The translations under genes were made by a program, and so were the position numbers. Below are positions 3,675 to 58,815 of a stretch of DNA of 64,000 bases, piece by piece (position 1 is the first letter of the stretch; every line of letters begins with the position of its first letter). The DNA comes from Styela clava (lineage: Eukaryota): assembly GCF_964204865.1 (NCBI RefSeq), contig NC_135255.1:13330001-13394000 (forward strand), in the 5' to 3' direction. The notes under the pieces were generated by a model. The model had not been told where the DNA came from and did not search any database. It saw only the letters and a program-made list of their open reading frames with translations.

Positions 3675-4092
3675 TACTAGTTTACCTTCCAACAAATCAC
3701 CATTTATCCACTTACCTCAATAACAGTGGAACATTATACGGCATCAGATCAGTAAGAAAATTATAAGCAGTTGATATGTGTTGCCTTGTATGAAAGCATG
3801 ATAAGTAGATAGACGCAACCTGAAGTTTATAAAATAGTAAAATCAATATCATCATGTAAATACTGTCATTATCAAAAATCGATCGGTCTATGCATTATTA
3901 TATTTTATATTTAAAATATTTAGTATCCTAAATGAGTTTATTATCATTAAGCAAAAAAGCAAATTCACAAAAATCTTTATTATTCCGAGAATTAGACATA
4001 AACATCTATAAAAAATAAAAAGATATCAATTTTAATAAACAACTGTACACTTACTATTATTATGTATCATGTTAGAATCTGGTAACCTAGAG

Positions 4093-4612: not shown

Positions 4613-5615
4613 ACCTAGAGTACATCATCGCCAATAAGTTCACATTATATTTCTACCTGATTATGAAATGTGTAGTCAGAAAATCTGGCATCAGAGCTGA
4701 GCAATTCATCAATGGCTAAATCTGGAGAACAAGTTGTTATGCATCGACGAATAACTGCAGTAAAATTCTTTAACCATATTTGACGCGTTTTTACAGTTAT
4801 TGTTGTTGGTTCGACTAGTTTTGAAGCAAGATGCTGACGATATAGAAGATATCTGTATAGAAAATTTGATATAAAAAAAATGGACTCGGGATATTTTTTT
4901 TTCCAAATGGGAGATGTTTTGACCATTTATGTAGTAGTAGTACTTACATATTTATCCTGGAGGAGAGAAAAGAATAGGAATGGAACGCTTAGCACAACGT
5001 GCCACTGGATATCATCAAGATGTCAAAGGTGACGTGACAATTGAAATTTTAAGAAGTCGCTTAGACAATTTTTAATTCAAGATTCTCAGGCATGGCTGGA
5101 AACATTATCTAGCATTTGATTAGTTTTTTCGTTGTCTCCAAAACGTGAGTACAATTAAACAACTGAATGATTATTTTGTCTTCCTAAAAGTTTTAATTCA
5201 GTCACAAGGATCAAAAATGAGTCCTGAGAAGAGAAACTCAAATTAGCTATCAATACTTTTGGATTTTACAATGATGGTATCAAGAAGTATCCAAATAAGT
5301 ATTTCGAGGAAAATGAATTATTTGAATATACTTTTATTTTTATTATTAAAAAAATTTGCGAATCTGATTATAAAGTCCCACCTTAGCCATATTTGTCTTC
5401 TATCATTTTCATCACCCACATCCACAATTGCCTTTTCATAATAATCCAGTATAACGTTGACAGATTCGCTGGATAAATCGAGAATTACACTGAAAAGAAC
5501 ATGATACACCATAAAGCATTGTTCAAAAATGAATAGAATCCAAATAGGAATTCCATTACAATTTCCTTAATCACAAACATTGATTGAGTGGCACATCAGG
5601 ATATTTCTGGATCTA

Positions 5616-6406: not shown

Positions 6407-6552
6407 CAGGGTGGTGGCTAGAAAAACAGTACCAACCTAAAACAACCAAGAACCTAAAAGAAATAAAAATGTATCGAAAAAGAAATAAGCACACATTTTA
6501 TTTGTGATGTCATGTGACCTTCAAATTTTCTGCTTTTTTATCAACCACCCTG
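6407..6552. mobile_element. Small inverted-repeat element; paralogs ~22295, ~36547
   Basis: CAGGGTGGTGGCTAGAAAAA ... TTTTTATCAACCACCCTG. Confidence 0.5.
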
Positions 6553-7238
6553 GTGTATTTCACATGATGAATCTTGATTTTATAAAAACCACAAAACTTT
6601 TACCTATTTTCAAATAAGCTGAAGCACAAGTTTCAAAATACAGAAGTGCAGCATCAATGTCCGATGATTCTTGATTCAATTGAAACAAAGCTGCTTCATA
6701 ACAAAGTTTTGCATCAGATGGATTTTCTGTCACAGCTTCTTCAAAGACCTTTAAAAAAGTAATATTAAATAGATAAGATCTTCTTGCCTGTTTGTCCTAT
6801 CCATGACTGTTATAATATCCCATTAAAAATAAGTATGCATTAACGATTTGACATTTCTCATTTATTACCACAAGAAAAATAATTTTTTTATTCTTTCAAA
6901 CTTAACATAATAATTTTGATATTTCAGTGCCTTTTTTATGCTTCTAATGGCTCAGTTATAGTTACATAGTTAATAGCTTTTTCAAGCTGCAAAATAACAT
7001 TTCAAACGCCTAAATGTCTGTTTTTCAGGCACTTCGTCATTTTCTCACACAACACATTTTGACAACAATACCAAACGCGCAGAAATTTCACAGCCAAATA
7101 GCAGGGGAAACAAGTTTTTTGCAATTTCCCATGGCAATTCAAAACACTTCACGACAAAAATAGCACTTTTTTAGCCATTCAAATTTAATGAATGGAAACA
7201 TTCCAACCTCTGAAATCTAAACGAATACAAAAATTCAA

Positions 7239-7246
7239 TATAAATA
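7239..7246 (+). promoter_or_regulatory. Candidate TATA box of collectin A; equivalents at ~23098, 26171, 37343, 58284
   Basis: TATAAATA conserved ~90-110 bp downstream of the paired site in five copies. An aaacAG acceptor 9 nt before each ATG implies a spliced 5' leader. Confidence 0.5.
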
Positions 7247-7451
7247 CTTTGCTTGCTACAGTAGTACAGTCAGCTGCTTAAGGCAGTAGGTTGGCATGCA
7301 TAGATGTATTTGCCTCAACTTTATAAATAACAAATAGTAACATAGAAGTTTCATTGAAATGGAATTGCAACTTGATTAATTTTAGACAGAAATGTATGTT
7401 AGACTGCATTTGAGTTTCAATTCTAATGTTTGCTTTAAACAGGCGTTAAAT

Positions 7452-9195
7452 ATGAGTAAGGGTATACTATATTGGATGTTTTTGAGCATTCAATTGCTCG
7501 TCAACCAAGTATATTGCAATCAAAGAATTTGCATGCAAATTGAAAATGTCAATGCAGAAGAAACCTACCCAATTCCACCACAACGAAGTTCACAGGGTGT
7601 TCCGGGCAAACGTGGGCCACCTGGTGAAATTGGCCCAAAAGGATCACAAGGGCCCAGAGGCCCAAAAGGAATTGTCGATTATGAAAGAATGAATGCAGCA
7701 ATAGAATCAGGTAATTTAAATTAATATTGAATTCGTTATTGGTTGTAAGCATCAGTGGGGCTTGTACAAAGCCTTGTCTGAGTGGAAGATCTTGCAGATT
7801 TCCCTTTAAAGGAATATATTGAAGTTTACTTCTTATTGTATATATATATAGTTTAAATGATGATATAATGACTGTTCGTATGAATGGACTTTGTATAGAT
7901 AAACCTAAGAATGTGGTTTTGGCAGAACATCCAATAATATTCTGTTGCAAAATCTTCTCACTCATTCATTGGTATTAAATTGAAATAAGGTATCCCTAAC
8001 ATTGATTCATTTAAAAATTTAGTTTGTATGATTTATACTATTAGTTCAGCGACCCATACTTTTATATGTAACTTGTTGCAGTGATAAATGATCTGCGGAC
8101 AGAAACGGAAGAGAAGATGAATAAAACCATGAATGATCTTCAGCAGAGGATGGGTAATAGTCGACTAAACTATCAATTATGTAAAACTGTTTTGTTAACA
8201 TTACATGATGAATTTTTTGTCAATGAGTTCTCAAACCTAAAATGCAAACTGGAAACATAAAAATTGTTGGGCAAATAAAATTCAGAATCCAGAATTCCCA
8301 ACATGAATTTAATTCATTTTTAAATAGAGCTAATTAAAAATTTCATTTTCTAGATAAAACAGTCAACTGTGAAGTCCTTCACAAAAATAAATGTTATCGG
8401 ATGATACTTCGTGGAACCACAATGCATTTTGACCAAGCAACACAAGCATGTAGAGATATTGGTATGAATATTGGATACATTGAAGATGAAACACATTACC
8501 AAAAAATAGCAGAGTTAGTCAGATCAAAATCAACATCATCTGGGACAGGATACTGGACAGGACTATTGTACAAAAACTCAGTGAGTATTTAAATTTGATT
8601 CATAACGAATATGGTGAACCAGCAAATATTTATCATTTCTATCACATTAAACTATCATTGTCTTATCTCGAATTAGGCTCAGAGCATAGTGCCAAACGTT
8701 AGGAATACGCTTGCCACAACACCTCAGATTACCCTGCGTGGGTTGGATGGTCCGATCATGTGTGGGATAACTATGTACAAGATAATTGCTGGACTTCTCG
8801 CTTCCATAGGGTGGTTCACATAACCGCTGGTCAGTTACAGCTTCCTTCACTGTCAAGTTCATGCATCAGGAAACTGGCCAACTAATCCCATACCCAACAT
8901 GACTGGTAACCGTACAAGAGGCTGCGGTTCCCCATATCATTATTAAGTCGCCTTATCGTCTCACCCTTGATACATATGTAACTCCTATCCTATCTATTTT
9001 AGCAACTTGTGACACTTTCTGGAAATCCATCACCGTTCATTAAATGGTATTCGGGTACACCCAGAAGTGGTGAGCAAAACAAAAATGTGTACATTTATGT
9101 CAGGAAAGATACAGGAAGTGAAAAACCACGGCATGGATAACAACAATCCAACACTCACACTACCTGGAGTGTTATGTCAAATCATGTATACTTAA
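7452..9195 (+). pseudogene. Collectin-like gene copy A (collagen + neck + C-type lectin); 1-nt frameshift in last exon
   Basis: GT-AG exons 7452-7710, 8082-8153, 8363-8580 (alternative in-frame acceptor at 8354), 9003-9195 with compatible phases. Signal peptide MSKGILYWMFLSIQLLVNQVYC, 9 Gly-X-Y, neck INDLRTETEEKMNKTMNDLQQRM, CTLD motifs C-x7-CY, FDQATQAC, YWTGL, VLCQ. An extra A in the run at 9121-9125 gives TAA at 9138-9140; this could be a homopolymer sequencing error. Confidence 0.85.
8676..8994 (+). mobile_element. Older copy of the same SINE filling collectin intron 3; also at ~24431-24754, 28563-28881, 39640-39958, 57026-57346, 60063-60368
   Basis: Colinear with 14211-14587 (cgttaggaatacg, agggtggttcac, atcccataccc, tcctatcctat). 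Confidence 0.85.
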
Positions 9196-9766
9196 GATCG
9201 GATTTGCAAGCATTGTTCACATAGTTTTATTTGTTAACTTCTCCAATCACACAATACTACAATGCTAGTTATATTGTCAATATTCAAATTACATAAATCG
9301 TATGGTGCCCTTGCTTACAAAATTCCATTTTTTTTATTATTTTATGATTTGATCATTATCTTGCTTGATATCAATCACATATCAAGTGAATATGGTCAAA
9401 ATTAATGTTGTGTTTTTTTGGTACTGGCAACAAATATATGAATAATTAAAAATTAAAAAAGTATGGTCGAAATAAAAGATAGAGATGGGAGAAGCATATT
9501 TGATTTGTAAAGTACGGTAGTAGTTTTGCGGAAAACATCAAATTTTCATTTCCTGGCAGTCGAAGGATTAATTGACTAATTATTTGATTAATTCCAATAC
9601 TATACCTGTGTAGCAGATAAGCTGTCGCCCTTCTTCACCAAAACATCTGCCCATATTATAGAAATATCAGTCACTCCCTTTTTGATCTGAGTTAGCGTTT
9701 CCTCATTTATTGACAGTTTTTGTATCGCTTTAGTCATAGTTTTACACAAAAACCTGTAAAACCAAG

Positions 9767-9823
9767 AAACTCATTCAAACTCATTGAAAACTCATTCAAA
9801 CTCATTGAAAACTCATTCAAACT
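9767..9823. repeat. 21-bp minisatellite (aaactcattcaaactcattga) x ~2.6, unit 1 only
   Basis: Direct inspection; replaces a longer intronic stretch seen in units 2-4. Confidence 0.7.
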
Positions 9824-12800
9824 TTTTCTCTGATTTCTAGAATCTTATTATTTTCAGGAACAAATTATTGAGGATACAAAATTTCTGACATTACATTTTG
9901 ATGAATATGGAATAAAAATTTACATTTAGTTTTGAATTTGCGATAATCTTTAGAATAGAAAGTCATAAATCAGAATGATATGTTTTACTTTTTAATGTAT
10001 ATATACTATGTAAATAAAATCATTCAGTTAATCAGTTGTTTTATTCGTCGATATTGGGCTGATTGGCCATTGTGAAGAAACCAAATACAACGAAGATCAC
10101 ATCATGGGGAAATGCAACATAGAATTCAATGATAGAAATGAACAGGTTGTAAAGTACTGGTTAGGATGACAATCAATCGAGATAAAAAAAAAGAGAATTC
10201 CCAATTCTTACTTTCAACTATTAGCAGCGTTGTCCCATTTTTGCTGAGATATTTCCAATCGCAATCTTTCCCGAAGTAACTGTAGAGCTGATAATGGATC
10301 TTCAGTTGATGAAGAATCCTTGATAGCAACTGAATCAAACATATAGTAAAATTAAGAATAACTTTGAAAATTCAAAAATACAAACGACAGAACTGCCCAA
10401 ATGAGCGAAGCCATTAAAAGAAATCCTACATTTCAAATTCATTAAAAAATTAGTTGTAAACGATTATTCACAATATTTCATTACAATTACGGCAACGAAG
10501 TGATGCCTAATTTAGGTCGTAATTGTAATTATATCGATTCATACCCTACAGACAGAACAGAAGATATATGGCCTATTTAACTCATGATGACGTCACAAAT
10601 ATAAAAAAAAAACTAGTAAAAACAATGTTTATGCTATTCCCAATATTTTCAAACTTTATATGTGTAAATTTTTTCATCTTATCAAACGAAAAAATTCAAA
10701 AATAATTTCATGATGTATTTGGAATGATAAATTATTTAATTTGGCCACCCCTGACCCGTACCATTATCTAAGTGAACAGGTCATAAAGCGTTGAGAATCA
10801 CCCCTAATGGGCATATTCGATAGTCCATTAGGCTACTCACCGTCAAGGTCAGCATGCAGGTTAGAATAGAAACTTTCGTCAAGTTTATTCCTTGAATTAA
10901 AGTCAAGCTGAACTTCTAATCCTGGATAAACTTTGATCCCGAAATAATTTCGAGCATTGAATGCAGAGCTAAAAAGTGACAAATAAGTGATATGTATTTC
11001 TGCTCAATATAGAAATTTGACTCACTCACAAATTCAAAGTAATTATGAGAATAACGGATTCAGGTATTTATTTTCACTGTGCATGAAAATTCAGTCAGTT
11101 TTTAAAGTCAAAATTTGACTATTGAAATTTCAAAGAAGTAAATGAGAAAACAAAGACACATATAAAGCAGTGCTTGCTGCTTTGACAGCAATATGATAGG
11201 ATGTTTCACTAAATAGTGCATTGTGAAAAATAAATAAATAAAACAGCTCAACCAATAACCATATTGCACACCATAACATATCCTATTATTCGATTGCTAG
11301 TCTACATTAGGTATGGGGTAAAGGTAACCAATTGATCATTTGAAATAGACGGATATGGATAAAACTTGGTATTGTTTTCAGACACTTACTTGCACCTTCC
11401 GCTGCCTACAAGGCCCTGTACAAGCAGCAACTGAGAACTCACTCGAACCCAATCAAAATGTATGAAGCTACCGCTATTAGAACAGCCCCAGATCTTTCCG
11501 GTTAGGCATTGCCTACACATTTTCATATTACTCTGGGTGAGGTGGGACTTATGGGATATTAACCCAAGATGAATAATATTATTAGAGTACCAAACCAGAA
11601 AACTCTTCTTTTCACTTTTTGTTACATTACCTTATATTTGGAAAAAAGCATCGTGGGAGATTATTGAAATGCACGACGTTTAAATATGCCAACCAAAGAT
11701 GATTAAGATCAGTCGACGTCAAACATCTATTCAAAGAAGATGTAGAAAAGGTGGGAAACTTCTGACTTTGTGGAGAGAATTCTTTTACTGTTACCTGTAG
11801 AAATGTTTTCGAATGTTAGAGGGACAAAAGTCGTAAAAAAAGGTCAGTCTAGATAAGGGTTATTCAAAATGAACCCTCCGCTCCACTAGGGGACCACAGA
11901 GAGTTTCCCTCTGGGCAAAAAGAACTTTCACTAGGTTTCATTCACGATAACGATGACAGATCTAGATTAACATTCCAAGTTATCGAGTAAAATCTTGTCT
12001 GATATTATGCAGAAAATTTGAAAAATTAAAAAAAAAAATAACTTCTTTTGAAATATTTTGCTCTCGGTAACGAATTATACATATGGATCGCTATACTATT
12101 TCTCATTGTTGTTATTCTTGTTGACATTATTTGGAAAAAATGGCCAGTACTGCTTGATTTCTCATTTTTAGTACTTAGATAGAAAAAGTTGCAAATTTGC
12201 TATTGCTTTTATTTTATTTCTCAAATTTTTCTATGAGACCATTATAATTACGAAAAACTTTTAGGGCTTTAATTAAAGGGGACACTTTTTTATTTCATCA
12301 CACTGGTCTTTTTTTGTCATAATTGGTGCTATGAGGTCTTACCGTAACCTTTGATGCACAGAGGGTCATATAGAAATGGTTATCTGGCCAGATTGGTTCA
12401 ACAGTTATTGTTAATATATGCCTTCAACATTGGAGCATTAATAAACATCGTTAGTCAAATGAACTTAACTTATTGAGACAATGTAACTATTTATTACGAA
12501 ATTCGAATGATAAGAAATATACTTGAAAATGATTAATTTGATCAAAAAAATAATTCTTACTTTCAACAATGGTAAAATCTTTAAAAATTTGGCGATTATA
12601 ATAATTGAAGTTGAGTTCGTTGCAACACTGTTTGCAAAAGCTATCTTGAAGTAACATCTGGTGATAAACCATTTACAGAGATCCCACCTTATAAAGAGAA
12701 AGAATATTGATAACAAACAACAATAAAATTTACGAAAAAGTCCCAGAGTCAAAAACAAAGTAACAAAAACTGAAAAATTTAGAAATCACGTTCAACATTT

Positions 12801-12889
12801 TTCAGCAAGTTTAAGAGGAGTTGGTCGTATAGAAATTCCCTTTTTACGTTTAAATCTCATGACAAAAGCTGTAAAGCAAGAAGTCAAAC

Positions 12890-22200: not shown

Positions 22201-23310
22201 AAAATGAAGCTAAAATTGAGAACCTAATATTAATATTAAAATCATGTCATCACTTAGGGTGTAATAAACTAGGCAATGCCGAAACCTGGTAACTACAGGG
22301 TGGTGGCTAGAAAAACAGTACCAACCTAAAACAACCTAGAACCTAAAAGAAAACACACATTTTATTTGTGGTGTCATGTGACCTTCAAATTTTCTGCTTT
22401 TTTATCGACCACCCTGGTGTATTTCACATGGTGAAACTTGATTTTATAAAAACTACGAAACTTTTACCTATTTTCAAATAAGCTGAAGCACAAGTTTCAA
22501 AATACAGAAGTGCAGCATCAATGTCCGATGATTCTTGATTCAATTGAAACAAAGCTGCTTCATAACAAAGTTTTGCATCAGATGGATTTTCTGTCACAGC
22601 TTCTTCAAACACCTTCAAAAAAGTAATACTAAATAGAAGAAGATCTTCTTGCCTGTTTGTCCTATCCATGACTGTTATAATATCCCATTAAAAATAAGTA
22701 TGCATAAACGATTTGACATTTCTCATTTATTACCACAAGAAAAATAATTTTTTTAAAACTTAACATAATAATTTTGATATTTCAGTGCCTTTTTTATGCT
22801 TTTAATGGCTCAGTTATAGTTACATAGTTTATAGCTTTTTCAACCTGCAGAATAACATTTCAAACGCCCAAATATCTGTTTTTCAGGCACTTCGTCATTT
22901 TCTCACACAATACATTTTGACAACAATACCAAACGCGCCGAAATTTCACAGCCAAATAGCATGGGAAACAAGTTTTTTTGCAATTTCCCATGGCAATTCA
23001 AACTACTTCATGACAAAAATAGTACTTTTTTAGCCATTCAAATTTAATGAATGGAAACATTCCAACCTCTGAAATCTAAACGAATGCAAAAATTCAATAT
23101 AAATACTTTGCTTGCTACAGTAGTACAGTCGGCTGCTTAATGCAGTAGGTTGGCATGCATAGATGTATTTGCCTCAACTTTATAAATAACAGTTAGTAAG
23201 ATAGAAATTTCATTGAGATGGAATTGCAACTTCATTAATTTTAGACAGAAATGTATGCTAGACTGCATTTGAGTTTCAATTCTAATATTTGCTTTAAACA
23301 GGCGTTAAAT

Positions 23311-24955
23311 ATGAGTAAGGGTATACTATATTGGATGTTTTTGAGCATTCAATTGCTCGTCAACCAAGTATATTGCAATCAAAGAATTTGCATGCAAATT
23401 GAAAATGTCAATACAGAAGAAACGTACCCAATTCCACCACAACAAAGTTCACAGGGTGTTCCGGGCAAACGAGGACCACCTGGTGAAATTGGACCAAAAG
23501 GATCACAGGGGCCCAGAGGACCAAAAGGAATTGTTGATTATGAAAGAATTAATGCAGCAATAGAATCAGGTAATTTAAATTAATATTGGCCGTAAGCATC
23601 AGTGGGGCTTGTACAAAGCCTTGTTTGAAGTGGAAGAACTTGCAAAAATTACAGATTTCCGTATATAAGAATATACTGAAGTTTACTTCTTATTGTATAT
23701 ATATATATAGTTTACATCTTTTTAAATGATGATATAATGACTGTCTGTATAAATGGACCTGGTATAGACAAAACTTAATAATTGGGTTTGTGCAGAACAT
23801 CCAAGTATGTTATGTTGTGGACTTTATTCACTCATTCAGTGGTAAAATTAAAACAATGTATCACTAATTTTGATGCTTTTATAAAATTTAGTTTGTTTGA
23901 TTTGTATTATTACTTCAGCGACCCATACTTTTATATTTAATCCATTGCAGCGATAAATGAGCTGCGGACAGAAACGGAAGAGAAGATGAATAAAACTATA
24001 AATGATCTTCAGCAGAGGATGGGTAATAGTTACTAAACTATCAATTATGAACAAACATGAATTTAATTTATTCTCAAACTGAGCTAAATGAAATTTTCAT
24101 TTATCAAATATGATAGTCAACTGCGAAGTCATTCACAAGAATACTTGTTATCGGATGATACTTCGTGAAACACAAATGAATTTTGACCAAGCAACACAAG
24201 CATGTAGAGATATCCGTATGAATATTGGATACATTGAAGATGAAACACATTACCAAAAAATCGCAGAGTTAGTCAGATTAAAATCAACATTATTTCGAAC
24301 AGGATACTGGACAGGACTATTGTACAAAAACTCGGTGAGTATTTAAATTTGATTCATAATGAATATGGTGAACTACCAATTCTTCAGCATTTCTATCTCA
24401 GTAAATCATCAATGACTTATCTCAGCTTACGCTCGACGGTGTAGTGTAAAGTGCTGAGCGTTAGGAATACGGTTGCAACAGCACCCCTGACTATCTTACA
24501 TAGTTTTGCAGGTCCAAATCCTGTGTGGGATAATTATGTACGAGATGAATGCAGGAATCCTCGCCTCCATAGGGTAGTTCACATAACCGCTGGTCGGTTA
24601 TGGCTTTCTTCGTCATTAAGTTCATGCATTAAAAACTGGCTAACTAATCCCACACCCAACATGACTGTTACCGGACGAGAGGCTGCGGTTCCCCATATGA
24701 TTATTAATTCGCGTTATCGCCTCTCCCGGGATGAGTGTGTAACTCCTATCCTATTTATTTCAGCAACTTGTGACACTTTCTGGAAATCCATCACCGTTCA
24801 CTAAATGGTATCCAAGTACACCCAATAGTAGCGGGCAAAAAAAAAATGTGTTCATTAATGTCAGGAAAGATACAGGAAATGTAAACCACGGCATGTATAA
24901 CAACTATCAAACAGTCACACAACCTGGAGTGTTATGTCAAATCATGTATACTTGA
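23311..24955 (+). CDS. Collectin-like protein copy B, intact, 246 aa
   Basis: Exons 23311-23569, 23951-24022, 24117-24334, 24764-24955 (259+72+218+192 = 741 nt), all GT-AG, open frame. Signal peptide, collagen GVPGKRGPPGEIGPKGSQGPRGPKGIV, neck, CTLD. Confidence 0.9.
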
Positions 24956-26426
24956 GATCGGATTAGCAAGCATTGTCCTGTTTGTTAACTTCTCGGATCA
25001 CACAAACTACAATGCTAGTTATATTGTCAATATTCAAATTACATAAATCATAAGGTGCCTTTGATTACAGAATCCCATTTTTATTATTATTTGATTTGAT
25101 TATTATCTTGCTTAATATCTATCAACTACTATGTGTAATGTGATAATGGTTAAAATTAATTTTGTGTTTTGCTTTTTGTTTGCATTGGCAACAAATATAT
25201 AAGTATTGAAAAATAAAGAAATATGGTATTTATAAAAGATAGTGAAGGCAGAAGAGGCATATTTTATTGTTGAAGTACAGTGATACCTCAGTAGTCGAAT
25301 GACTCGTTACTCAAACATTCAGCAGTCGACCAAAAATTATAGTCAAAAATACTGAAGTTCCTTAAAACGAAAATCGGGTGATCGAACATTTGAGCATTCC
25401 CTGAGTGAGATTACATCAACCAAACAGCAAATCTCGACTGCCTCTTTACCACTCAACAACAGAGCCATGCTAATATATGTGAACATGAAAGACAATATAA
25501 AGAAGTACGCGTATGGTTTATGTCACAATAAACTGTTGGTTGGTACAGCAATTTTCACGACTAACGAGGAAGCAGAACTGTCACAAGATGGACAAATATT
25601 TATGCAGTCATCGTAAACAATGAACAAATCCCATAGAACCCAAAGATTTTTATCTTCATTATGTTTAATCTTTATTATGTACACATTTAAATGATTATTG
25701 TTGTTTAAAAACACTTTTTGTTGATAGTTAGTTAAAAACATATTACATTACATAGGCTGTCTAATACATTAAATTCTCAAATTAAAATTTCTCATTCATT
25801 CCACACAAGTCATACATCTTTTTTATTTTCATATACTTTTCAAAAAAATAATAATTTAGATATTTTAGTGCCTTGTTTTTATGGCTCAGTTGAAGTTGCA
25901 AAAAACATTGTTAATAGCTTTTTTCAAGCTGCAAAAAACATTTCAAATGCCCAAATGTCTGTTTTTTCTGTAAATCATCATTTCCTTGCACGAACAGGCC
26001 AAGACTTATATTGAAAACAATACCAAAAGTACAGAAATTTCACAGCCAAATAACGTGGGAAACAAGTTTTTTGCAATTTACACGACAATCCAAAACACCA
26101 CACAACAAAAATAGCAAATTTTTCGTGGTTAAAAACAACACACCATCTAAAAACGAAAGCATAATCCCAATATAAATACTTGCTACAGTACATTGCTTAA
26201 TGTAGTAGGTTAGCAACAATACTAGAATGCTGGTTATAAAATAAAGCACATGATGATGAACTATTTAACTTCACATGAATAATCATTTTATTAAGAATCA
26301 TCGATTTGGACTTATATAGGTGGCACCTGATTACAAAATTCTATTTTTTTATCATTAATATTATTTGATTATGATCTTGTTCAATATCACTCATCTAACA
26401 TGTGCAGCAATTTCACAGCCAAATAG

Positions 26427-26458
26427 CGTGGGAAACAAGTTTTTTGCAATTTCCCACG
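26427..26458. promoter_or_regulatory. Inverted CSL/Su(H) paired site (SPS) upstream of collectin C
   Basis: CGTGGGAA-16 nt-TTCCCACG. Variants at 7102-7133, 22960-22992, 26054-26084, 37213-37244, 58141-58172. Confidence 0.55.
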
Positions 26459-26629
26459 ACAATCCAAAACACCACAACTCAAAAATAGCAATTTTTTAGT
26501 CGTTGGAATTTAGTGGTTCAAAACAACACAGAACACAGCATCTAAAAACCAAAGCATCATCCCAATATAAAGCTGTATTGACTGCATTTGAGTTATAATG
26601 CTAATGTTAGTTCCAAACAGGCATTAAAC

Positions 26630-29081
26630 ATGAGTAAGGGTATACTATATTGTATGTTTTTGAGCATTCAATTGCTCATCAATCAAGTATGTTGCAATCA
26701 AAGAATTTGCATGCAAATTGAAAGTGTCAATGCAGAAGAAACGTACCCAATTCCACCACAACGAAGCTCACAGGGTGTTCCGGGCAAACGTGGACCACCA
26801 GGTGAAATTGGCCCGAAAGGGCCACAGGGGCCAAGAGGCCCAAAAGGAATTGCTGATTATGAAAGAATTAATGCAGCAATAGCATCAGGTAATTTAAATT
26901 AATATTTATTTGCTATTGGCCGTAAGCATCAGTGACGCTTGTACAAAGCCTTGTTTCGAGTGGAAAATCTTGCAAAAATTAGATTTCCCTTTATAAGAAT
27001 ATATTGAAGTTTACTTCTTATTGTAAATATATATATATATGCTTTACATCTTTTTAATTGGTGATATGAAGACTTTCCGTATAAATGGACTTGGTATATA
27101 CAAACTTAATAATGGGGTTTTGGCAGAACATCCAAGTATGTTGTGTTGCAAACTTTATTCTCTCATTCATTGAAAAATTAAAAAAAATAGTGTATCACTA
27201 ATTTCAATGTTTTTAAAAAATTTAGTTTGTTTGAATTGTACTATTACTCCAGCAACCCATACTTTTATATTTAACTTATTGCAGCGATAAATGATCTGCG
27301 GACAGAAACGGAAGAGAAGATGAATAAAACTATGAATGATCTTCAGCAGAGGATGGGTAATAGTTACTAAACTATAAGTTATGCAAAACTGTTTTGTTAA
27401 CATGACATGATGAATTTTTTGTCAAGGAGTTTTGTCTCAAACATAAAATCAAATGCAAACTGGAAACATAAAATTGTTTGGCAAAAAAGATTCAGAATCT
27501 AGAATTCCCAACATGAATTTAATTCATTTTTAACCCTTTCCATGCGATTTTTATTTTTTATTAAATAATCGTATTTGCTACGCCGACTTTATGCATTTGT
27601 ACCCCCACAACTAATCGATCGACTAACGAAAAAGTAATGATCCTCTGCTGCCCACTGACGGCTTGTTGGAAAGCTTATTTAAAGAGCTTGCAATTGGCGA
27701 TTAAAAAAAATTTTTTTTTTAAAAGGGGTGGTCTGAGTCACAAACCGGATAGAAAAAAGGCATTTTTTTTTCTTGGGTGTTGAAACTTCAAACCGTGATA
27801 AAAAATAGAAATATTTGCTAAATCCTTTACTGTTACCGCTTCTTGGTTGGCAAACAATGCATAATATTGCTGTAGCAATTTCGTTATCTAACTCAAAATA
27901 CTTTGGTAGATGGAAGGGATAATTTGTCTTCTATCACTACCCAAAAAACACCGAAATTTGCATAAATTTCAAAAACACTCCATCGTTCCTCCGCAAATAA
28001 AACTCCCATGGTAAACGAAAGCGAGATTTATCGTCGCTTATGTTAATCTCGAAGAAGACTTTTTATCAATAAACTAAAACCCGGAAAAACTAGACCAACA
28101 GTTTGCGACCGATTGCTAAATAAAACAGTGGAGTACATCAACGTACCCGCCGCAATCTAGCGAGTTTTGTCGTGGGTACGTATACGTGCCCACCGCACGG
28201 AAAGGGTTAAACGAAGCTAAATGAATTTTTCATTTTCTAAATATAATAGTCAACTGCGAAGTCATTCACAAGAATACTTGTTATCGGATGATACTTCGTG
28301 GAACACAAGTGAATTTTGACCAAGCAACACAAGCATGTAGAGATATTGGTATGAATATTGGATACATTGAAGATGAAACACATTACCAAAAAATAGCAGA
28401 GTTAGTCAGATCAAAATCAACATCATCTCTTACAGGATACTGGACAGGACTATTGTACAAAAACTCAGTGAGTATTTAAATTTGATTCATAACGAATATG
28501 GTGAACCAGCAAATATTTATCATTTCTATCACATTAAATTATCATTGACTTATCTCGGATTAGGCTTAGAGCATAGTGCCAAACGTTAGGAATACGCTTG
28601 CCACAACACCTCTGATTACCCTGCGTGGGTTGGATGGTCCGATCCTGTGTGGGATAACTATGTACAAGATAATTGCTGGATTCCTCGCTTCCATAGGGTA
28701 GTTCACATAACCGCTGGTCAGTTACAGCTTCCTTCACCGTCAAGTTCATGCATCAGAAAACTGGCTAACTAATCCCATACCCAACATGACTGGTACCCGT
28801 ACAAGAGGCTGCGGTTCCCCATATCATTATTAAGTCGCCTTATCGCCTCACCCTTGATACATATGTAACTCCTATCCTATCTATTTCAGCAACTTGTGAC
28901 ACTTTCTGGAAATCCATCACCATTCACTAAATGGTATCCGGGTAGACCCAATAGTGGTGAGCAATACAAAAATGTGTACATTTGGGTCCAGAAAGATACA
29001 GGAAGTGTAAACCAGGGCATGTATAACTACATTCCAACACCCCTACGACCTGGAGTGTTATGTCAAATCATGTATACCTAA
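26630..29081 (+). CDS. Collectin-like protein copy C, intact, 246 aa
   Basis: Exons 26630-26888, 27285-27356, 28250-28467, 28890-29081; open frame, GT-AG; piggyBac-type MITE in intron 2. Confidence 0.9.
27534..28206. mobile_element. Non-autonomous piggyBac-type element (673 bp) in collectin C intron 2
   Basis: TTAA-CCCTTTCCATGCG ... CGCACGGAAAGGG-TTAA; single TTAA at the equivalent site in copy A (~8320). Confidence 0.9.
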
Positions 29082-30494
29082 GATCATATTAACAAGCATT
29101 GTCTACAGATTTCTTATTTGTTAACTTCTCCGATCACACAATACTACAATGCTAGTTATATTGTCAATATTCAAATAACGTAAATCGTATCGTGCACCTA
29201 ATTACAGAATTCCATTTTTTATTATTATTTCATGATTTGATTATTATCTTGCTTGATATCAATCCTTCATGAGGTGACTATGGTCAAAATTAATATTATA
29301 TAAAAAAATAAATAAAAAAGTATGGTATATATAAAAGATAGAAATGGGAGAAGCATATTTGATTATTATTACAGTTGTTTTGTGGAAAACAGCAAATTTT
29401 CATTTTATGACAGTTGAAGGATTAATTAACATTAACAAACAGACAATTTTTCCTAATACCATTAATTCTTTGGAAGGGAATTTGATGAAAAAACAATGTC
29501 ATGCGCACTCTAAAATAAAGGAAATTGATAACCACTGAAGTATAAAGAGCTACTGAGATTATAAGAATTTTGATGTAGAATTCAGTGTTAGTGCATGTGT
29601 ATTCAAAATATAATGCAATAAACGTAATAAAGGATCTATAATTAGAAAACATCTCAATACCATACCTGTGTGGCAGCTAAGCTGTCTCCCTTCTTCACCA
29701 AAACATCTGCCCACATCATAGAAATATCAGTCACTTTCTTTTTCATCTGTCTTATCGTTTCCTCATTTATTAACAGTTTTTGTATCGCAGTAGTCATAGT
29801 TTTACACAAAAAACTGTAAATCCAAGAGAAAATTTTTTTCTCCAATGAAAATGATGTTATAAATATAACTTTGCCATTGACAAGATAGAGTTTGTAAAAC
29901 CTCATTTGTCTTTTCTTATTTTTTCTAACAAAAATGGAAATTAGATAGACAAGAAGAAATTGAAAACTCAGTCAAACCTTTCCTCTTATTACTAGAATCT
30001 TATTATTTTCAGGAACAAATTATTAAAGTTACAAAATTTCTGACATTACATTTTGATAAATGTGGAATGAAAATTTACATTTCGTTTTAAATTTGCGATA
30101 ATTTTTAGAATAGAAAGACATAAATCAGAATGATATGTTTAATTTGTTACTGTATATATACTATGTAAATAAAATCATTCAGTTATTCAGTTGTTTTATT
30201 CGTCGATCATGGGGGAATGCAACATAGAATTCAATGATAGGAATAAACAAGTTATAAAGTACTGGTTAGGATGAAGTTAAAAAAAAAGACGATTCTCAAT
30301 TCTTACTTGCAACTATTAGCAGTGTCCAATTTTTGCTGAGATATTTCCAATCGCAATTTTTCCCGAAGTAATTGTAACGCTGATAATGGATCTTCAGTTG
30401 ATGAAGAATTCTTGATAGCAACTGAATCAATCATAATTATAGTAAAATTCAGTGTAACTTTGAAAAATCAGAAATTGAATGGATCAAATATCTA

Positions 30495-52710: not shown

Positions 52711-55238
52711 GTATGTATGTATGTTTATTCGTCTCGTAAAAGCAATATAAAAGAGTAAGTACTTATAAATACTGAAGACGGGATGTATGCACAAGACCAT
52801 ATTGGCCTAAAACACAGATGTGTGGCATACACCCCTTTGATTTATATAAATTATAATAGGGTAAATCAAATATGTACAATATGGTCCTTTATACAGGCAG
52901 TTGTGCGAGGAGGGTGGGTGGATGCGGTAACAGGGATATGGGTGGAGTGTACAAAACTGTTTGTACAAAGGAGTTTGTTAGACAAAACAACATCTATAAA
53001 TAGAGACACAACACAACATGAAACGCAATGCATATGAATATAGTAATAAAAAAATTTAAAAAAAAAAAAAAAAAAATTAAGAATTTGGATGAATGTACAA
53101 TACCATTGAGTGATGATACCACATACTATAAAACGCGGGAATGGTCAAGTTTAAAGGGTGTGTACATATATGGTATGCACCACTCAAGGGCGACAGTGTT
53201 ATAAGTGGTCTATGGCTGTTCTGGCCAAAATGTGACCCTACAGGTTTTGGCAAAATATGATAAAAAAGGTATGTATCAAATGACTCACTATTATAAGGTT
53301 TTTTTTTGAAATTCTGGATTCAGCCAAAAACAATGAAGTTTCAAAAAAAAAAAATTAATAAAAAGCATTTCCACAAAACCTATTATGGTTGCATTTCAGC
53401 CAGAAGATTAGAAAGGTATAAAGGTACAGTGGGATAAGGAATGATAAGTTATAAAGAGAAGCCATTTTACCATGTCATGGATTTTCCAATGTAAATTAAA
53501 ATAATAAAATTATATGGTATCCTGGGATGAGCAGAAGAAAAAGTGTGATTCGGAGATAGGTAGCAACAATGGAAATAAATTGAACAGCATGCTACTCAAA
53601 CAAAAACCATTGTCCCTACTATTTGAGCATTCTATCTATAACCTAAATTGCTGTGCTTTTGTTGTTGTCTAATTACGCATGATAATGAAATTAGAATGGT
53701 GTGCTAGTTATTAATTCAGTCGATTGTTCTATATTGAATCCGGGTGAAGTATCCTGTGGAGTTATTGAAATTGTCAGCTGGTCTATGGTGACTGAAGAGG
53801 AGGACAGTTTCCTGATAGTTCATTCAATCCAAATAATCAACAGCTCTCTCTTTCAGTGTTGAACTGACCTTAAAAAAATAATCTCCAAACAGTAACATGT
53901 TCAAAGCAGAGAAAATTGCTAATATGATGATAATATATATTGTTTAAGTTTGGAACGAAATTCTGAGTTCGATTTTGAATTTTTGATGTCATCGGGTAGG
54001 GAATTCCAAGCTTTTGGTCCACATACTGCGATTGATTCTTGTGAAATACTTTTACTGACAAATGGAATAAAAAAATTATCTTTATTTCTGCTGTTTGAAT
54101 TTGGGTTTGCTTGGAACAGGCTGTTCAGGCTGGACGGAAGCTCTCCAATGTGACAAGAGAACATCATATTACATAGTTCGAATTTAGCTAAATCCACAAC
54201 TCGTAGTAGCCTATGCTCTTTAAATAAGTCATCAATTTTTTCGCGATTACCTCTATGAAAAACTCTTCTAATAAAGCGATTGCAAACACTTTGAATTTTT
54301 TTGAGAATGGACGATTGGCGATGAACATAAGCTGAGGCACAATAACGAATATGGCTTTCTATCAGAGAGTGGTATAGAGATATTAAACAAGATGTATTTA
54401 AGTAGTTGGCTATTTTCGTAATGGCACTAAGAGACGACCTTGTTTTCGATAGAACCATATTGGTGTGTTGTTTCCAAGACAATTTATCATCGATCATTAC
54501 ACCCAGAAAGCGAGTCTGATTAACTCTTTCTATATTTATTCCATTTAATTCCAAATTTTGTTGCAGAGTTGGACACTTTTGCTTCGGCGTGCTAAATATC
54601 ATATATTTAGTTTTATCGACATTAATAGTGAGTTTGTTCGCAGACAACCAAGCTTGAATATTTTCTAAGTCGGTATTTGCCTTGGTCAAAAGTTCATGCA
54701 AGTTTTTGCCTCGAAGATATGGCGTTGAGTCATCAGCAAAAGTATGATATCAGAGTGAAGAAGAGAATTCGGAAAGTCGTTAATAATGATTGAAAAACAT
54801 AATGGAGCCAAAATAGAACCTTGTAAAGTACCTACAGTCAAATTACAGTATGTGCTAGATGCTACATCATTGTATATAACTACTTGTTTCCTTCCTGATA
54901 AGTAGCTTTTAAACCAATTATAACTCTGACCTCTAACGCCAATATGGTGCAATTTGGCTAGTAATATGTCATGGTCAATACTATCAAATGCCTTGGAAAG
55001 GTCCAAGAACATACTGAGAGTATACTCATTCTTATCAAATCCTTCTAGAATTTTACTGACAAGCAGGGATGTTGCATGAGATGTTGAATGATTTTGACGA
55101 AAGCCAAATTGTTGTGAATAAAAGAAATTTTTTTGGTCTAGGAATTGGTTGAGTCGTTTGTACATAATTTTTTCTAGAATTTTTGAAAATGCGGGAAGTA
55201 AGCTGATCGGTCGGTAGTTTTTTACATCTTTTGCATGA
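52711..55238 (-). mobile_element. 5'-truncated non-LTR retrotransposon (CR1/L2 group), RT ORF2 with one frameshift, 3' UTR and microsatellite tail
   Basis: NYRPISLLPAFSKILEK, QFGFR, FLDLSKAFD, QGSILAP, FADD (frameshift at ~54740), then a continuous ORF to the stop at 53919. On the minus strand it ends in AATAAA-(CATA)3-C at 52729-52711. Confidence 0.9.
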
Positions 55239-55788
55239 CGGCCGCATAGGTTGCAGTGGCCATACGCTGGTCGTGTATCTAAATATTTCTCAGCGGGTCT
55301 GTTCTAGTACACTCGGCAGACTAACATTGATAATAATAAAAAAGATTTAACGCCTTTCATATCTATTTTTGTATTTAACCGCTTACTATTAAAGTGTGTA
55401 AAGCGTGTCTTAATTTAGCATATCAGTATTTAGGGATTACATACATTTGGAACAATTGAAGGCCAAATATATTGTAATATTCTTAAATTTGATTGTCCTG
55501 GGATATGCCTGTTTAGTATCAAATTTCCAAATAAATAATACATTTATAGTAATACATTTACAATCCAGCAATGTGGAAATTCCCACTATTTGAATAAGTA
55601 TGAAAATAGAATAGGATTCGGTATTCTGGATTCGATTCAACTATTCTAGAATAGTAAATTATTCTGTAAGTGGAATTGCAAGTGGATTAATCAAAGCCAT
55701 ATACGTATGCATTCAATTCACTATAAACCAGCTGTATTGACTGCATTTGAAGTATAATTCTAATGCTAGCTTCAAACAGGCGGTAAAT

Positions 55789-57547: not shown

Positions 57548-58815
57548 GATCGGATTAGCAAGATCGGATTAGCAAGCATTGTCCACCGAGTTCTTTTCGT
57601 TAAGTTCTCTGATCACACAATACTACAATGCTAGTTAGGTTGTCAAATTACATAAAGCATATGGAGCACCTGATTACAGAATTCTATTTTATTATTATTT
57701 TATGATTCGATTATTATCGTGCTTGTGATCAATTACGTTACCTGCGATGTGACTATGGTCAAAATTAATATTGAATTGTGTTTTTTGTTATTGGTGACAA
57801 ATATATAAATAATAAAAAAGTATATCATTGTCGGCATATATAAAAGATAGAGATGGGAGAAGCATATTTGATTACTAAAGCAGTTGTTTTGTGGAAAACA
57901 GCAAATTTCAATTACATATCAGTCAAACAGACGATTATTCTTAATACCATTAAATATTCAGGAGGAAATTCGATCTGAGCAACTTCATGGATACTCTGAA
58001 ATAAAGGAAATTCGAGATGCAAAATACTATTTCGAACCTACAAATGACTGTTTTCGGTATTTCATCATTTTTTAACACGAAAATGTCAAGTGTTTTATTG
58101 AAAACAACACCAAAATTGCGGAAATGTCATAGCAAAATAATATGGGAAACAAGTTTTATGCAATTTCCCATGGTAACCCAATACATCCAATATATTCATG
58201 GCAAAATATTATCACCTTACACATTGGAGTTTACTGCTTGAAAAAACACAACACTTGAAAGCTAAACAACCGTGTCAATTCAATATAAATACTTCCAGTA
58301 TTCAAAATTTACGAGCTAAACCAAAGAATACTCTTGATGCAGTAGGTTGGCGAGCATAGATGTATTTGTCTTAACTTTGTAATTAACAATTAGTAAGATA
58401 AGTTTCATTTAATTGGAATTTATAGAAATCAAATCTCATTTATCGATTATGTTTTGAACAGTTAAAAACATACTCGACATCGTAGCATTGATAACCTTCT
58501 CGGGCTTTAATCCCCAATGTTGGATACAAATGTACGAGTGGCGGGTAAGCCAATTCATATAATGATGGTTAGTTACGGCTTCCTCCTCCCTTAAATTTAT
58601 GCATCTGAAACTAAGTTGTTCCTCTATCCATTCCCATGCCCAACATATATACAAATCCTAACCTAAGTAAAAACCGTAAGTAAGTAATTGGAAAAGTACA
58701 AACGCTACAACAAAGTGCAATAATCTATGGCAGAAATGTATGTAATCAATTTATTCTAAGCCAGCTGTGTAGACTGCATTTCAATTCTAATGCTAGCTTT
58801 AAACAGGCGTTAAAT

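What the first reader, a model, noticed from the sequence alone, without database searches (positions are those of the whole stretch)
6749..9605. Collectin genes are nested antisense inside one intron of a ZFC3H1-like gene, and the host exons were amplified with them
Seen: minus-strand exon 9753-9606 (..KKGDSLSATQ) splices in phase to 6748-6604 (VFEEAVTENP..), and collectin A lies wholly in between. The same intron holds B+C (22613-29665) and D (36865-40745); E+F lie directly beyond the equivalent donor exon at 61153. Known: ZFC3H1 is the nuclear exosome (PAXT) adaptor and is normally single copy. Inference: selection for collectin copy number dragged the housekeeping gene's 3' half along as decaying passenger copies.
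Basis: partly seen in the sequence, partly recalled or inferred. Interest (0 to 1): 0.75.

Follow-up and report, generated by a model that had tools for sequence, protein, structure and literature searches.

The report
Lectin genes amplified inside ZFC3H1 intron
A collagen-tailed lectin gene sits backwards inside one intron of this animal's only ZFC3H1 gene, and the lectin plus the host's last exons were copied about 16-26 times, with the exon copies on one side of the lectin decaying while those on the other side are still expressed and kept intact by selection.

Summary
Collectin-like gene A lies inside that 2857-bp intron on the plus strand. B+C and D sit in the equivalent intron of two other units, and E+F lie beyond the fourth donor exon.

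The host is a ZFC3H1 orthologue. Its single-copy 5' half, with the genome's only zf-C3H1 match, lies 270 kb away at the high-coordinate edge of a ~340-kb array. Exon peptides match a 24-orthologue profile colinearly. Genome-wide there are 19 copies of the donor exon, 16 of the acceptor exon and 26 of lectin exon 1, all in this array.

"Decaying passengers" is only half right:
- Exon copies upstream of the lectin evolve neutrally and are often broken (16 synonymous, 60 nonsynonymous events).
- Exon copies downstream are spliced and expressed from non-parental copies. They show omega about 0.2-0.3 (25:19, p 4e-7 to 7e-5) and 14 of 14 intact splice sites.

They probably encode short C-terminal ZFC3H1 proteins paired head-to-head with each lectin. 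Other first readers noted the same array in two neighbouring windows.

The parts
9606..9753 (-). Unit 1, host exon 'P17' (donor side of the lectin-holding intron); 1 nt + 49 codons, open
   Evidence: (joints 9753>10212 and 6748>9606)
6749..9605 (-). Unit 1, host intron that holds collectin-like gene A (2857 nt)
   Evidence: joint 6746>9604 cut +2, minus-strand GT..AG, run X5, 1 contig
6604..6748 (-). Unit 1, host exon 'P18' (acceptor side); matches ZFC3H1 profile positions 689-733 from its first residue
6149..6302 (-). Unit 1, host exon 'P19'
   Evidence: joint 6302>6604 in X1, X2, X5; profile 729-786
5378..5489 (-). Unit 1, host exon 'P20' (start fixed by RNA loose ends at 6149; 3' end not fixed)
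   Evidence: (table 7)
4657..4818 (-). Unit 1, core of host exon 'P21' (boundaries inferred)
3715..3819 (-). Unit 1, core of host exon 'P22' (boundaries inferred); further 3' exons not mapped
10212..10329 (-). Unit 1, host exon 'P16c'; carries a TGC>TGA nonsense change at 10216-10214 that the 11 other copies examined lack
10841..10968 (-). Unit 1, host exon 'P16b'
   Evidence: joints 10329>10841 and 10968>11631
11631..11793 (-). Unit 1, host exon 'P16' (WLAYLN motif; 5' boundary +/- 2 nt)
12498..12888 (-). Unit 1, remnant of host exon 'P15' and flanks, with the two 1-nt insertions shared by all non-parental copies; upstream limit of the duplicated unit
7452..9140 (+). Collectin-like gene A coding exons: 7452-7710 (signal peptide, Gly-X-Y), 8082-8153 (neck), 8363-8580 (first half of C-type lectin domain), 9003-about 9140 (second half, frameshifted relative to B, C, D)
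8650..8990 (.). SINE-like dispersed repeat inside lectin intron 3 (also at 14277-14587 and 45660-45969)
   Evidence: table 2, DNA-run depth 2288-8439
22468..29813 (-). Unit 2: P18 22468-22612, intron with collectin-like B (23245-24952) and C (26582-29078), P17 29666-29813; P16c 30307-30421 and P16b 31013-31140 present, no P16
36720..40893 (-). Unit 3: P18 36720-36864, intron with collectin-like D (37489-40155), P17 40746-40893
55741..61300 (-). Unit 4: P17 61153-61300 with collectin-like F (58771-60565) and E (55741-57544) below it; P18-P21 absent
53922..55303 (-). Non-LTR retrotransposon reverse-transcriptase ORFs, where unit 4 lacks P18-P21
   Evidence: RVT_1 98 bits

Best explanation
The genome has one ZFC3H1 orthologue, on the minus strand of contig C6 from about 13,627,900 to below 13,598,900. 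One intron in its C-terminal HAT-repeat region, between exons I call P17 and P18, holds a plus-strand collectin-like gene.

A segment was duplicated in tandem many times. It runs from the intron upstream of exon P15 (the breakpoint abuts a SINE-like repeat), through that nest, to beyond the gene's 3' end. The result is a ~340-kb array downstream of the intact gene. The window holds four of its units.

Shown:
- the structure of the array;
- the splicing of the exon chain;
- neutral decay of the exon copies upstream of the lectin (P15-P17);
- protein-level purifying selection on the exon copies downstream of it (P18-P22);
- RNA that carries variants specific to non-parental copies.

Inferred: each unit's P18-to-end block is a working short gene. 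It would encode roughly the last 330 residues of ZFC3H1. It would be transcribed from inside the former intron, head-to-head with the lectin 660-900 bp away, probably from a shared bidirectional promoter. The array would then be a family of lectin / short-ZFC3H1 gene pairs, not lectins plus dead host debris. The start codon and the function of the short protein are not established.
For: Host identity and single parent:
- PF10650 has 1 match in the genome, at C6:13611219-13611266(-).
- The HAT2 exon has 1 copy.
- Against the profile of 24 orthologues: zf exon positions 212-257 (E 4e-16), HAT1 357-405, HAT2 411-468, P16 530-575 (1e-7), P18 689-733 (3e-7), P19 729-786, P20 785-822, P21 834-877, P22 876-910.
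- P16c matches 621-654 (E 0.028).
- The full-length hit is the Lingula protein so named.

Array:
- 16 P18, 19 P17 and 26 lectin exon-1 copies, all in C6 13.264-13.606 Mb with constant strands.
- The parental intron also holds a lectin.
- The breakpoint is at 13608368-76, next to a repeat at 13608383-13608536.

Splicing and expression:
- Canonical joints appear only in the RNA-like runs.
- In X5 the variant 6704T, found only in 6 non-parental copies, takes 67.1 of 105.2 depth. The parental-type 6717T takes 27.4 of 107.4.
- The X2 contig has neither 6717T nor any other difference from unit 1 over P18.

Selection:
- P16-P17 have 16 synonymous and 60 nonsynonymous events.
- P18-P22 have 25 and 19, with binomial p 4e-7 to 7e-5 for kappa 1-4.
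- An earlier count gave Fisher p 3.8e-4.
- Pairwise distance is 0.020 for exon P18 and 0.0245 for P19, against 0.055-0.12 in flanking introns. Exon P17 is 0.072 against 0.046-0.126.
- Unit 1 against each of the 11 non-terminal units (11 of 13 comparisons): 0.7-1.6% in exons, 3.3-6.4% outside them; against the two low-coordinate terminal copies 3.2% and 5.6% in exons, 8.3% and 15.0% outside.

Integrity: P18 is open with AG/GT in 14 of 14 copies and P19 in 13 of 14. P16-P17 have at least 5 disabling changes among about 12 units.

Head-to-head pairing: 13 of 14 P18 copies lie 660-900 bp from a lectin exon 1.

Possible internal start: a contig in X1 (6670-7075, depth 124) runs unspliced from the intron into P18. 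An in-frame ATG lies 19 or 28 codons upstream of P18 in 7 of 14 copies.
Against: - No start codon is common to all constrained copies. Seven of 14, including unit 1 and the parent, have no in-frame ATG in the intron before P18.
- The X1 contig that enters P18 from the intron could not be assigned to any sampled copy. Its strand is unknown, and it might be unspliced precursor RNA or a plus-strand transcript.
- Contigs give no strand, no ends and no reliable level.
- The runs are only guessed to be RNA and come from individuals whose arrays may differ from the assembly.
- The P17>P18 joint shows that at least some transcripts do read P17 into P18, so P18 is not only a first exon.
- No predicted protein of 181-577 residues resembling the ZFC3H1 C-terminus was found with the Lingula C-terminal part as query. 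That search depends on shared 5-residue words, so the blank is weak.
- Exon boundaries of P20-P22 are partly inferred, and exons after P22 are unmapped.
- Substitution events were counted against a consensus, not on a tree.
Confidence: 0.65

Rival explanations
1. One reading: every non-parental host exon copy is a non-functional passenger that decays, carried along only because the lectin was amplified.
For: - All 10 non-parental copies of P15 examined share frameshifting insertions.
- P16-P17 evolve neutrally and are often broken. Unit 1 has a nonsense codon in P16c.
- The lowest-coordinate copy has a frameshifted P19.
- The copies lack the gene's 5' half, which is single copy.
Against: - P18-P22 have 25 synonymous and 19 nonsynonymous events, p 4e-7 to 7e-5 against neutrality.
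- Exon divergence is 4-5 times below flanking DNA in each of the 11 comparisons with non-terminal units and 2.6-2.7 times below in the two with terminal copies. If one lineage of each pair were dead, the ratio should be about 0.6, not 0.2-0.25 (inference).
- Splice sites are kept in 14 of 14 P18 copies.
- RNA contigs carry variants private to non-parental copies.
Confidence: 0.12
2. Alternative 3' cassettes: transcription from the one ZFC3H1 promoter runs far into the array, and the parental P17 (or P15) donor splices to P18 (or P16) of distal units. Every P18-P22 block is then a used 3' end of the full-length protein and is selected as such.
For: - All units lie downstream of the 5' half on the same strand.
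- P17>P18 joints exist.
- P18 needs an upstream coding exon in the 7 of 14 copies without an intronic ATG.
- Non-parental P18 variants dominate the RNA contigs in X5 and X2.
Against: - It needs primary transcripts of tens to hundreds of kb that skip nearer, equally good acceptors and pass the gene's own 3' end. No joint from single-copy exons to a distal unit was seen.
- The only upstream loose end on P16 is parental-type P15, and which unit's P16 it joins is not known: unit 1 and the parental P16 are 95.1% alike and contigs were laid from 92%.
- Rarely used cassettes would be weakly selected.
Confidence: 0.13
3. Exon-limited gene conversion from the selected parental copy keeps the distal P18-P22 exons parental-like without any function of their own.
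For: Tandem arrays commonly undergo conversion (general knowledge). Many P18 variants are shared in mosaic patterns among copies.
Against: - Conversion erases synonymous and nonsynonymous differences alike. Here synonymous divergence in P18-P22 (0.165 events per site) is as high as in P16-P17 (0.136).
- Pairwise synonymous distance is in the intron range. Only nonsynonymous change is depressed.
- Introns 150-300 nt away are 3-12% diverged, so tracts would have to stop at exon edges.
Confidence: 0.07
4. Assembly artefact: the array comes from mis-assembled haplotypes or collapsed and expanded repeats.
For: Tandem arrays are hard to assemble. In run X10 the unit-1 letters at 9690 and 9695 were not seen.
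Against: - Units differ by 3-20% and in structure: one or two lectins, missing exons, retrotransposon insertions.
- DNA-run contigs and RNA contigs from three other studies carry several of the variant types.
Confidence: 0.03

Closest known systems
ZFC3H1 (scaffold of the PAXT nuclear-exosome connection; fission-yeast counterpart Red1)
   Same: The parental gene has the zf-C3H1 finger, C-terminal HAT repeats and colinear similarity to 24 animal orthologues. The role of the family is taken from the search listing and abstract starts of PMC7049725 and PMC5972229 and bioRxiv 10.1101/2022.01.19.476877.
   Different: Its last exons exist in 16-19 extra copies, and an intron in the HAT region houses a lectin gene. 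The extra copies lack the finger and everything N-terminal to it, which from recall includes the MTR4-binding part.
Genes nested antisense in an intron of a host gene (recalled examples: EVI2A/EVI2B/OMG in NF1, F8A in F8)
   Same: A complete gene with its own introns lies on the opposite strand inside one host intron.
   Different: Here the nest and the host's flanking and 3' exons were amplified together as a tandem unit, and the host's downstream exon copies stay under selection. I know of no described case, but only one literature search, on ZFC3H1 itself, was run.
Partial gene duplicates and new genes from tandem segmental duplication (known from Drosophila and mammals; recalled)
   Same: Tandem duplication with one breakpoint inside a gene gives 5'-truncated copies downstream of the intact gene. 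The breakpoint lies next to a dispersed repeat.
   Different: The truncated copies are split by selection regime exactly at the nested gene: neutral upstream, constrained downstream.
Collectins (collagen-containing C-type lectins such as MBL and surfactant proteins A and D) and invertebrate C-type lectin expansions
   Same: Signal peptide, short Gly-X-Y run, heptad-like neck and a C-type-lectin-like domain, each on its own exon, in a tandem family.
   Different: Pfam support is sub-threshold: Collagen 23.5 bits against 27.2, and Lectin_C 15.6-18 bits against 22.6 for the first half only. The second half gives no hit and, read by eye, lacks the two inner cysteines. Hence 'collectin-like'.

Membership tests
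ZFC3H1 orthologue (parental gene) | zf-C3H1 zinc finger (Pfam PF10650) | tested here: met
   22 bits in the genome scan against a cut-off of 20.9. 19.7 bits, E 7e-4, on the exon ORF. 49 bits, E 4e-16, against the profile of 24 orthologues.
ZFC3H1 orthologue (parental gene) | C-terminal HAT/TPR repeat region colinear with orthologues | tested here: met
   Nine exon peptides searched separately hit profile positions 357 to 910 in genomic order, plus P16c at 621-654. P16b, P17 and P15 are not significant on their own.
ZFC3H1 orthologue (parental gene) | Single locus in the genome | tested here: met
   One PF10650 match and one HAT2-exon match in 377 Mb.
ZFC3H1 orthologue (parental gene) | Binding of MTR4 and PAXT function | not testable with these tools
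   Biochemical. N-terminal exons gave no significant family match.
ZFC3H1 orthologue (exons flanking the lectin) | The two flanking exons are consecutive in the coding sequence | tested here: met
   RNA joint 6748>9606 (1 contig, 1 of 3 RNA-like runs). P18 aligns from its first residue to Lingula residue 1996 and profile position 689, and P16c ends at 654, leaving a gap that the 49-residue P17 fits. Whether orthologues have an intron at this point was not testable.
Collectin | Collagen-like Gly-X-Y region | tested here: inconclusive
   PF01391 at 23.3-23.5 bits, E 5e-5, below the 27.2 cut-off. About 9 triplets are visible.
Collectin | C-terminal C-type lectin domain | tested here: inconclusive
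   PF00059 at 15.6-18 bits (cut-off 22.6) on exon 3 of A, C and D, matching profile 2-50 of 107. Exon 4 of C and D gave no hit. Exons were scanned singly; the joined protein was not.
Collectin | Alpha-helical neck and oligomerisation; sugar binding | not tested
   A 23-residue neck exon is seen. No structural or biochemical test was made.
Processed-out or decaying pseudogene (non-parental host exon copies) | Disabling mutations and a neutral substitution pattern | tested here: met
   For P15-P17 only: shared frameshifts in P15 (10 of 10 copies), omega 1.0-1.4, and nonsense, frameshift and splice-site losses.
Processed-out or decaying pseudogene (non-parental host exon copies) | The same, for exons P18-P22 | tested here: not met
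   Omega 0.21-0.30. P18 is open in 14 of 14 copies and P19 in 13 of 14, with intact splice sites. Expressed variants are private to non-parental copies.

The most novel reading that the evidence does not exclude
The amplified unit is a pair of co-regulated genes born from a nested arrangement. Each collectin-like gene would share a bidirectional promoter with a short gene made of the host's last exons. About a dozen such short genes would encode free C-terminal HAT-repeat modules of the nuclear RNA-decay scaffold ZFC3H1, without its zinc finger and N-terminal half. Such modules could compete with or tune the full-length PAXT scaffold whenever the lectins are induced. That would tie an innate-immune lectin family to nuclear RNA surveillance.
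Probability: 0.25. Interest if true: 0.8.

Novelty: new variant of a known kind. Interest (0 to 1): 0.6.

Why it matters
Nested genes and partial tandem duplicates are each well known. Here the two combine in a way that lets the fate of co-amplified host exons be read directly.

The same duplicated unit holds exons that decay neutrally and exons that are kept by selection, and the boundary between them is the nested gene. That is a clean natural example of how an intron-resident gene can split a host gene copy into debris and a new transcription unit.

If the short ZFC3H1 C-terminal products are real, an essential single-copy RNA-decay adaptor has spawned a multi-copy family of truncated paralogues linked to immune lectins. 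That can be tested with long-read RNA and proteomics.

For annotation, gene finders are likely to fuse or mis-join these units.

Tried and rejected
Searches that gave nothing useful:
- A Pfam scan of ten duplicated-exon ORFs gave nothing.
- A PDB sequence search with the first HAT exon was blank.
- The donor exon P17 could not be shown to be ZFC3H1-like on its own. Its best local alignment to the Lingula protein is out of register (36 of 1000 shuffles reach it), and its profile E is 0.4-2.
- A word search with the C-terminal 330 residues of the Lingula protein, meant to find short ZFC3H1-C-terminal gene models, returned none at E <= 0.001 among 2664 candidates.
- Two papers were probed for what the C-terminal repeats bind. 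Passages of PMC13391367 were not informative, and my terms occur 0 times in PMC12873606.

Analyses that failed or were replaced:
- I tried to assign the X1 contig that enters P18 from the intron to the copy at 13449099. Its variants do not fit.
- A conservation scan to find exons after P22 saturated and was uninformative.
- MAFFT-based counts of intron 'events' (0.43-0.93 per site) looked inflated by misalignment. I replaced them with pairwise distances.

My own slips:
- One search used a mis-framed P18. It was corrected.
- timed out and was rerun on the last 1000 residues.
- The unit labels printed are miscomputed, though each row is still one unit.
- The first 'P20 core' included 23 intronic bases. 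It was corrected.

Considered and rejected: exon-limited gene conversion, the 'snapshot of the parent' model, and assembly artefact (see rivals).

Not done:
All searches, profile matches and substitution counts were made exon by exon, and codons split by introns were dropped.
- Supplementary files of papers were not asked for.
Full report
**The sequence and the observation**

The window is AT-rich (31-41% G+C). It is a patchwork of tandem segmental duplicates 75-96% identical to one another. It is G000:C6:13330001-13394000 of a 377-Mb assembly.

On the minus strand, 9752-9606 reads FLCKTM..SATQ and 6748-6605 reads VFEEAV..YLKI without stops. The flanks are AG and GT.

**RNA evidence**

One search found nine runs guessed to be RNA, from three studies, and four DNA-like runs. 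All are from one coded organism. I laid contigs of X1, X2, X5 (RNA-like) and X10 (DNA-like) on window 6100-11900 at 92% likeness.

Minus-strand joints with GT..AG ends occur only in the RNA-like runs:
- 6302>6604 in all three runs;
- 6748>9606 in X5 only (one contig, side 29, depth 25);
- 9753>10212 in X2 and X5;
- 10329>10841 in X1 and X2;
- 10968>11631 in all three runs.

Two further exons, 10841-10968 and 10212-10329, lie between the exon at 11631-11793 and the donor exon.

The same runs give plus-strand GT..AG joints at 7707>8079, 8152>8362 and 8580>9003. These define a four-exon plus-strand gene inside the intron. X10 covers all 30 bins and shows none of these joints. The RNA-like runs have zero depth in several intron bins. 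That supports the guess that they are RNA.

**The nested gene**

- Exon 1 encodes a hydrophobic start and about nine Gly-X-Y triplets.
- Exon 2 encodes a 23-residue neck.
- Exons 3 and 4 encode a C-type-lectin-like domain.

Scanned exon by exon, Pfam gives Collagen at 23.3-23.5 bits (cut-off 27.2). It gives Lectin_C at 15.6-18 bits (cut-off 22.6) for exon 3 only. I therefore call it collectin-like.

Six copies lie in the window: A 7386-9200, B 23245-24952, C 26582-29078, D 37489-40155, E 55741-57544 and F 58771-60565. Copy A has a frameshift in exon 4 relative to B, C and D. An X2 contig shows a 1-nt difference there (table 4).

**The host gene**

None of the duplicated exon ORFs hits Pfam. 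The genome's only PF10650 (zf-C3H1) match, however, is at C6:13611219-13611266 on the minus strand. That is just upstream of the highest-coordinate copy of the acceptor exon.

I fetched 13.45-13.65 Mb. It shows a long minus-strand gene with single-copy exons. These include a proline-rich N-terminal exon, a 748-codon exon, the zinc-finger exon, two HAT exons and exon P15. After them come the exons that are duplicated in the window.

A full HMMER search with the second HAT exon found 8 proteins at E <= 0.001. One is a 2325-residue protein that its sources name 'zinc finger C3H1 domain-containing protein-like [Lingula anatina]'. It carries zf-C3H1 and HAT domains.

With that protein as query I collected 95 ZFC3H1 proteins. 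From 24 of them I built a profile of the last 1000 residues. I searched the exon peptides against it one at a time:

| Exon | Profile positions | E-value |
|---|---|---|
| zinc finger | 212-257 | 4e-16 |
| HAT1 | 357-405 | 6e-10 |
| HAT2 | 411-468 | 1e-11 |
| P16 | 530-575 | 1e-7 |
| P18 | 689-733 | 3e-7 |
| P19 | 729-786 | 1e-5 |
| P20 | 785-822 | 3e-4 |
| P21 | 834-877 | 6e-5 |
| P22 | 876-910 | 2e-4 |

The RNA-defined exon 10212-10329 hits 621-654 (E 0.028 among 235 ORFs).

The donor exon P17 is not significant alone (E 0.4-2). Its assignment rests on the RNA joints and on the 34-position gap it fills. P18 aligns from its first residue to Lingula residue 1996 (4 of 1000 shuffles reach the score).

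**Extent of the array**

Genome-wide counts are as follows:
- The HAT2 exon has 1 copy.
- P17 has 19 copies.
- P18 has 16 copies.
- Lectin exon 1 has 26 copies, plus 3 distant relatives on other contigs.

All array copies lie between C6 13.264 and 13.606 Mb. The host exons are on the minus strand and the lectins on the plus strand.

The copy next to the 5' half is intact in every exon examined, and its P17-P18 intron also holds a lectin.

In the parent, similarity to the copies stops at 13608368-76. This is beside a dispersed SINE-like repeat at 13608383-13608536, which suggests repeat-mediated unequal exchange.

The window's four units are laid out under 'parts'.

**Are the copies decaying?**

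Upstream of the lectin, yes:
- All 10 non-parental P15 copies aligned share two 1-nt insertions.
- Unit 1, which holds lectin A, has TGC>TGA at the end of exon P16c where 11 other copies keep TGC.
- One P16 has a frameshift. One P17 lost its acceptor and has a stop. Two P16b copies have AT donors. Several copies are partial.
- Distinct substitutions against the consensus in P16-P17 are 16 synonymous and 60 nonsynonymous. That gives omega 1.0-1.4 and is not different from neutral.

Downstream of the lectin, no:
- P18 is open with AG/GT in 14 of 14 sampled copies.
- P19 is open in 13 of 14. The exception is the lowest-coordinate copy.
- P18-P22 have 25 synonymous and 19 nonsynonymous events, giving omega 0.21-0.30.
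- The binomial p is 4e-7 to 7e-5 for kappa 1-4. It is unchanged without the parent.
- One copy has 5 changes in P18, all silent.

Mean pairwise distances point the same way:

| Region | Exon distance | Adjacent intron distance |
|---|---|---|
| P18 | 0.020 | 0.055-0.12 |
| P19 | 0.0245 | 0.055-0.12 |
| P17 | 0.072 | 0.046-0.126 |

Unit 1 differs from each of the 11 non-terminal units by 0.7-1.6% in these exons and by 3.3-6.4% outside them; from the two low-coordinate terminal copies it differs by 3.2% and 5.6% in exons and by 8.3% and 15.0% outside.

Synonymous change is not reduced, at 0.165 events per site against 0.136 upstream. Exon-limited homogenisation therefore does not explain this. 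If one member of each pair were dead, the exon-to-intron ratio should be near 0.6 rather than 0.2-0.25 (inference).

**Which copies are expressed?**

Within P18 three variants are diagnostic:
- 6717T marks the parent and four other sampled copies.
- 6704T occurs only in non-parental copies.
- 6746C occurs only in non-parental copies.

In X5, 6704T takes 67.1 of 105.2 depth (3 contigs) and 6717T takes 27.4 of 107.4 (5 contigs). In X2 the single spliced P18-P19 contig has none of these changes. So non-parental copies appear to supply much of the P18-containing RNA.

Two caveats apply. The individuals differ from the assembly. Contig depth is also a poor measure.

**How it may work**

Thirteen of 14 P18 copies lie 660-900 bp from a lectin exon 1 on the other strand. 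Constraint begins exactly at P18.

A 413-nt X1 contig (depth 124) runs unspliced from 7075 into P18, while other intron bins are empty. An ATG 19 or 28 codons upstream is in frame with P18 in 7 of 14 copies.

I infer that the P18-to-end block is transcribed from within the old intron, head-to-head with the lectin. It would encode about the last 330 residues of ZFC3H1.

Points against this reading:
- Seven copies, unit 1 included, have no such ATG.
- The strand of that contig is unknown.
- P17>P18 splicing exists.
- A search for short homologues was blank.

The main rival is that distal blocks serve as alternative 3' ends of the full-length mRNA.

**What is known, and novelty**

ZFC3H1 with MTR4 forms the core of the PAXT connection. 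I take this from the abstract starts of PMC7049725 and PMC5972229 in the listing.

Nested antisense genes and 5'-truncated tandem duplicates are known kinds (recalled). Their joint amplification, with a selection boundary at the nest, is a new variant as far as I can tell. I ran only one literature search, so I make no claim that it is not in print.

Other first readers flagged the same array in two neighbouring windows. My searches cover those places and agree on the structure.

**Limits**

- Exons after P22 are unmapped.
- The read evidence is contigs only.

Noticed in passing
window 9398-9800: In X1 and X2 the depth over the host donor exon and the 200 nt below it (473-796) is at lectin level, far above other host exons (67-134 in X2). 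Contigs run unspliced across the donor site (9589-9728, 9490-9642). Plus-strand poly(A) signals lie at 9445-9476. A lectin 3' UTR reading antisense through host exon P17, or an unspliced host form, may exist. The strand is unknown.
   Followed up: partly
window 9761-9830: A short tandem repeat of about 21 nt (GTTTGAATGAGTTTTCAATGA-like) lies directly upstream of the P17 acceptor. An X2 contig skips 36 nt here (joint 9767>9804), so its length varies among copies or individuals.
   Followed up: no
window 8650-8990, 14277-14587, 45660-45969; also C6:13608383-13608536: A dispersed SINE-like element sits in lectin intron 3. DNA-run depth there is 2288-8439 against roughly 60-610 in the other bins. 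It also sits next to the duplication breakpoint in the parental gene, so it may have mediated the first unequal exchange.
   Followed up: partly
protein P0004 (Lingula anatina ZFC3H1-like), residues about 1395-1710 and 1711-2026: The Lingula gene model itself contains a near-perfect 316-residue tandem repeat of the HAT region. It runs from the HAT2 equivalent into the P18 equivalent, which is roughly the region that is duplicated here. It may be a real internal duplication or an assembly artefact.
   Followed up: no
window 30307-30421, 41391-41505, 61796-61910 versus 10212-10329: Two unit subfamilies exist. Exon P16c is 118 nt in unit 1 and in the parent-like units. It is 115 nt, an in-frame 3-nt deletion, in window units 2-4 and two others. 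The same split shows in P17 (89-91% against 94-97% identity to unit 1).
   Followed up: partly
window 12945-13601, 43940-44708, 53922-55303: Non-LTR retrotransposon reverse-transcriptase remnants lie between units. The most complete (RVT_1 98 bits) sits where unit 4 lacks exons P18-P21.
   Followed up: partly
C6:13603352-13603594: The lectin in the parental intron matches lectin exon 1 only from residue 6, so its start codon region differs from the others. Whether it is intact was not checked. Lectin D's exon 1 has a TGA inside the match, and lectin E matches exons 3-4 in shifted frames.
   Followed up: no
C9:6505087-6512011 and C5:17470313-17470510: Only three distant relatives (41-52% identity) of lectin exon 1 exist outside the array. 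This lectin type therefore seems to have expanded only inside the ZFC3H1 intron.
   Followed up: no
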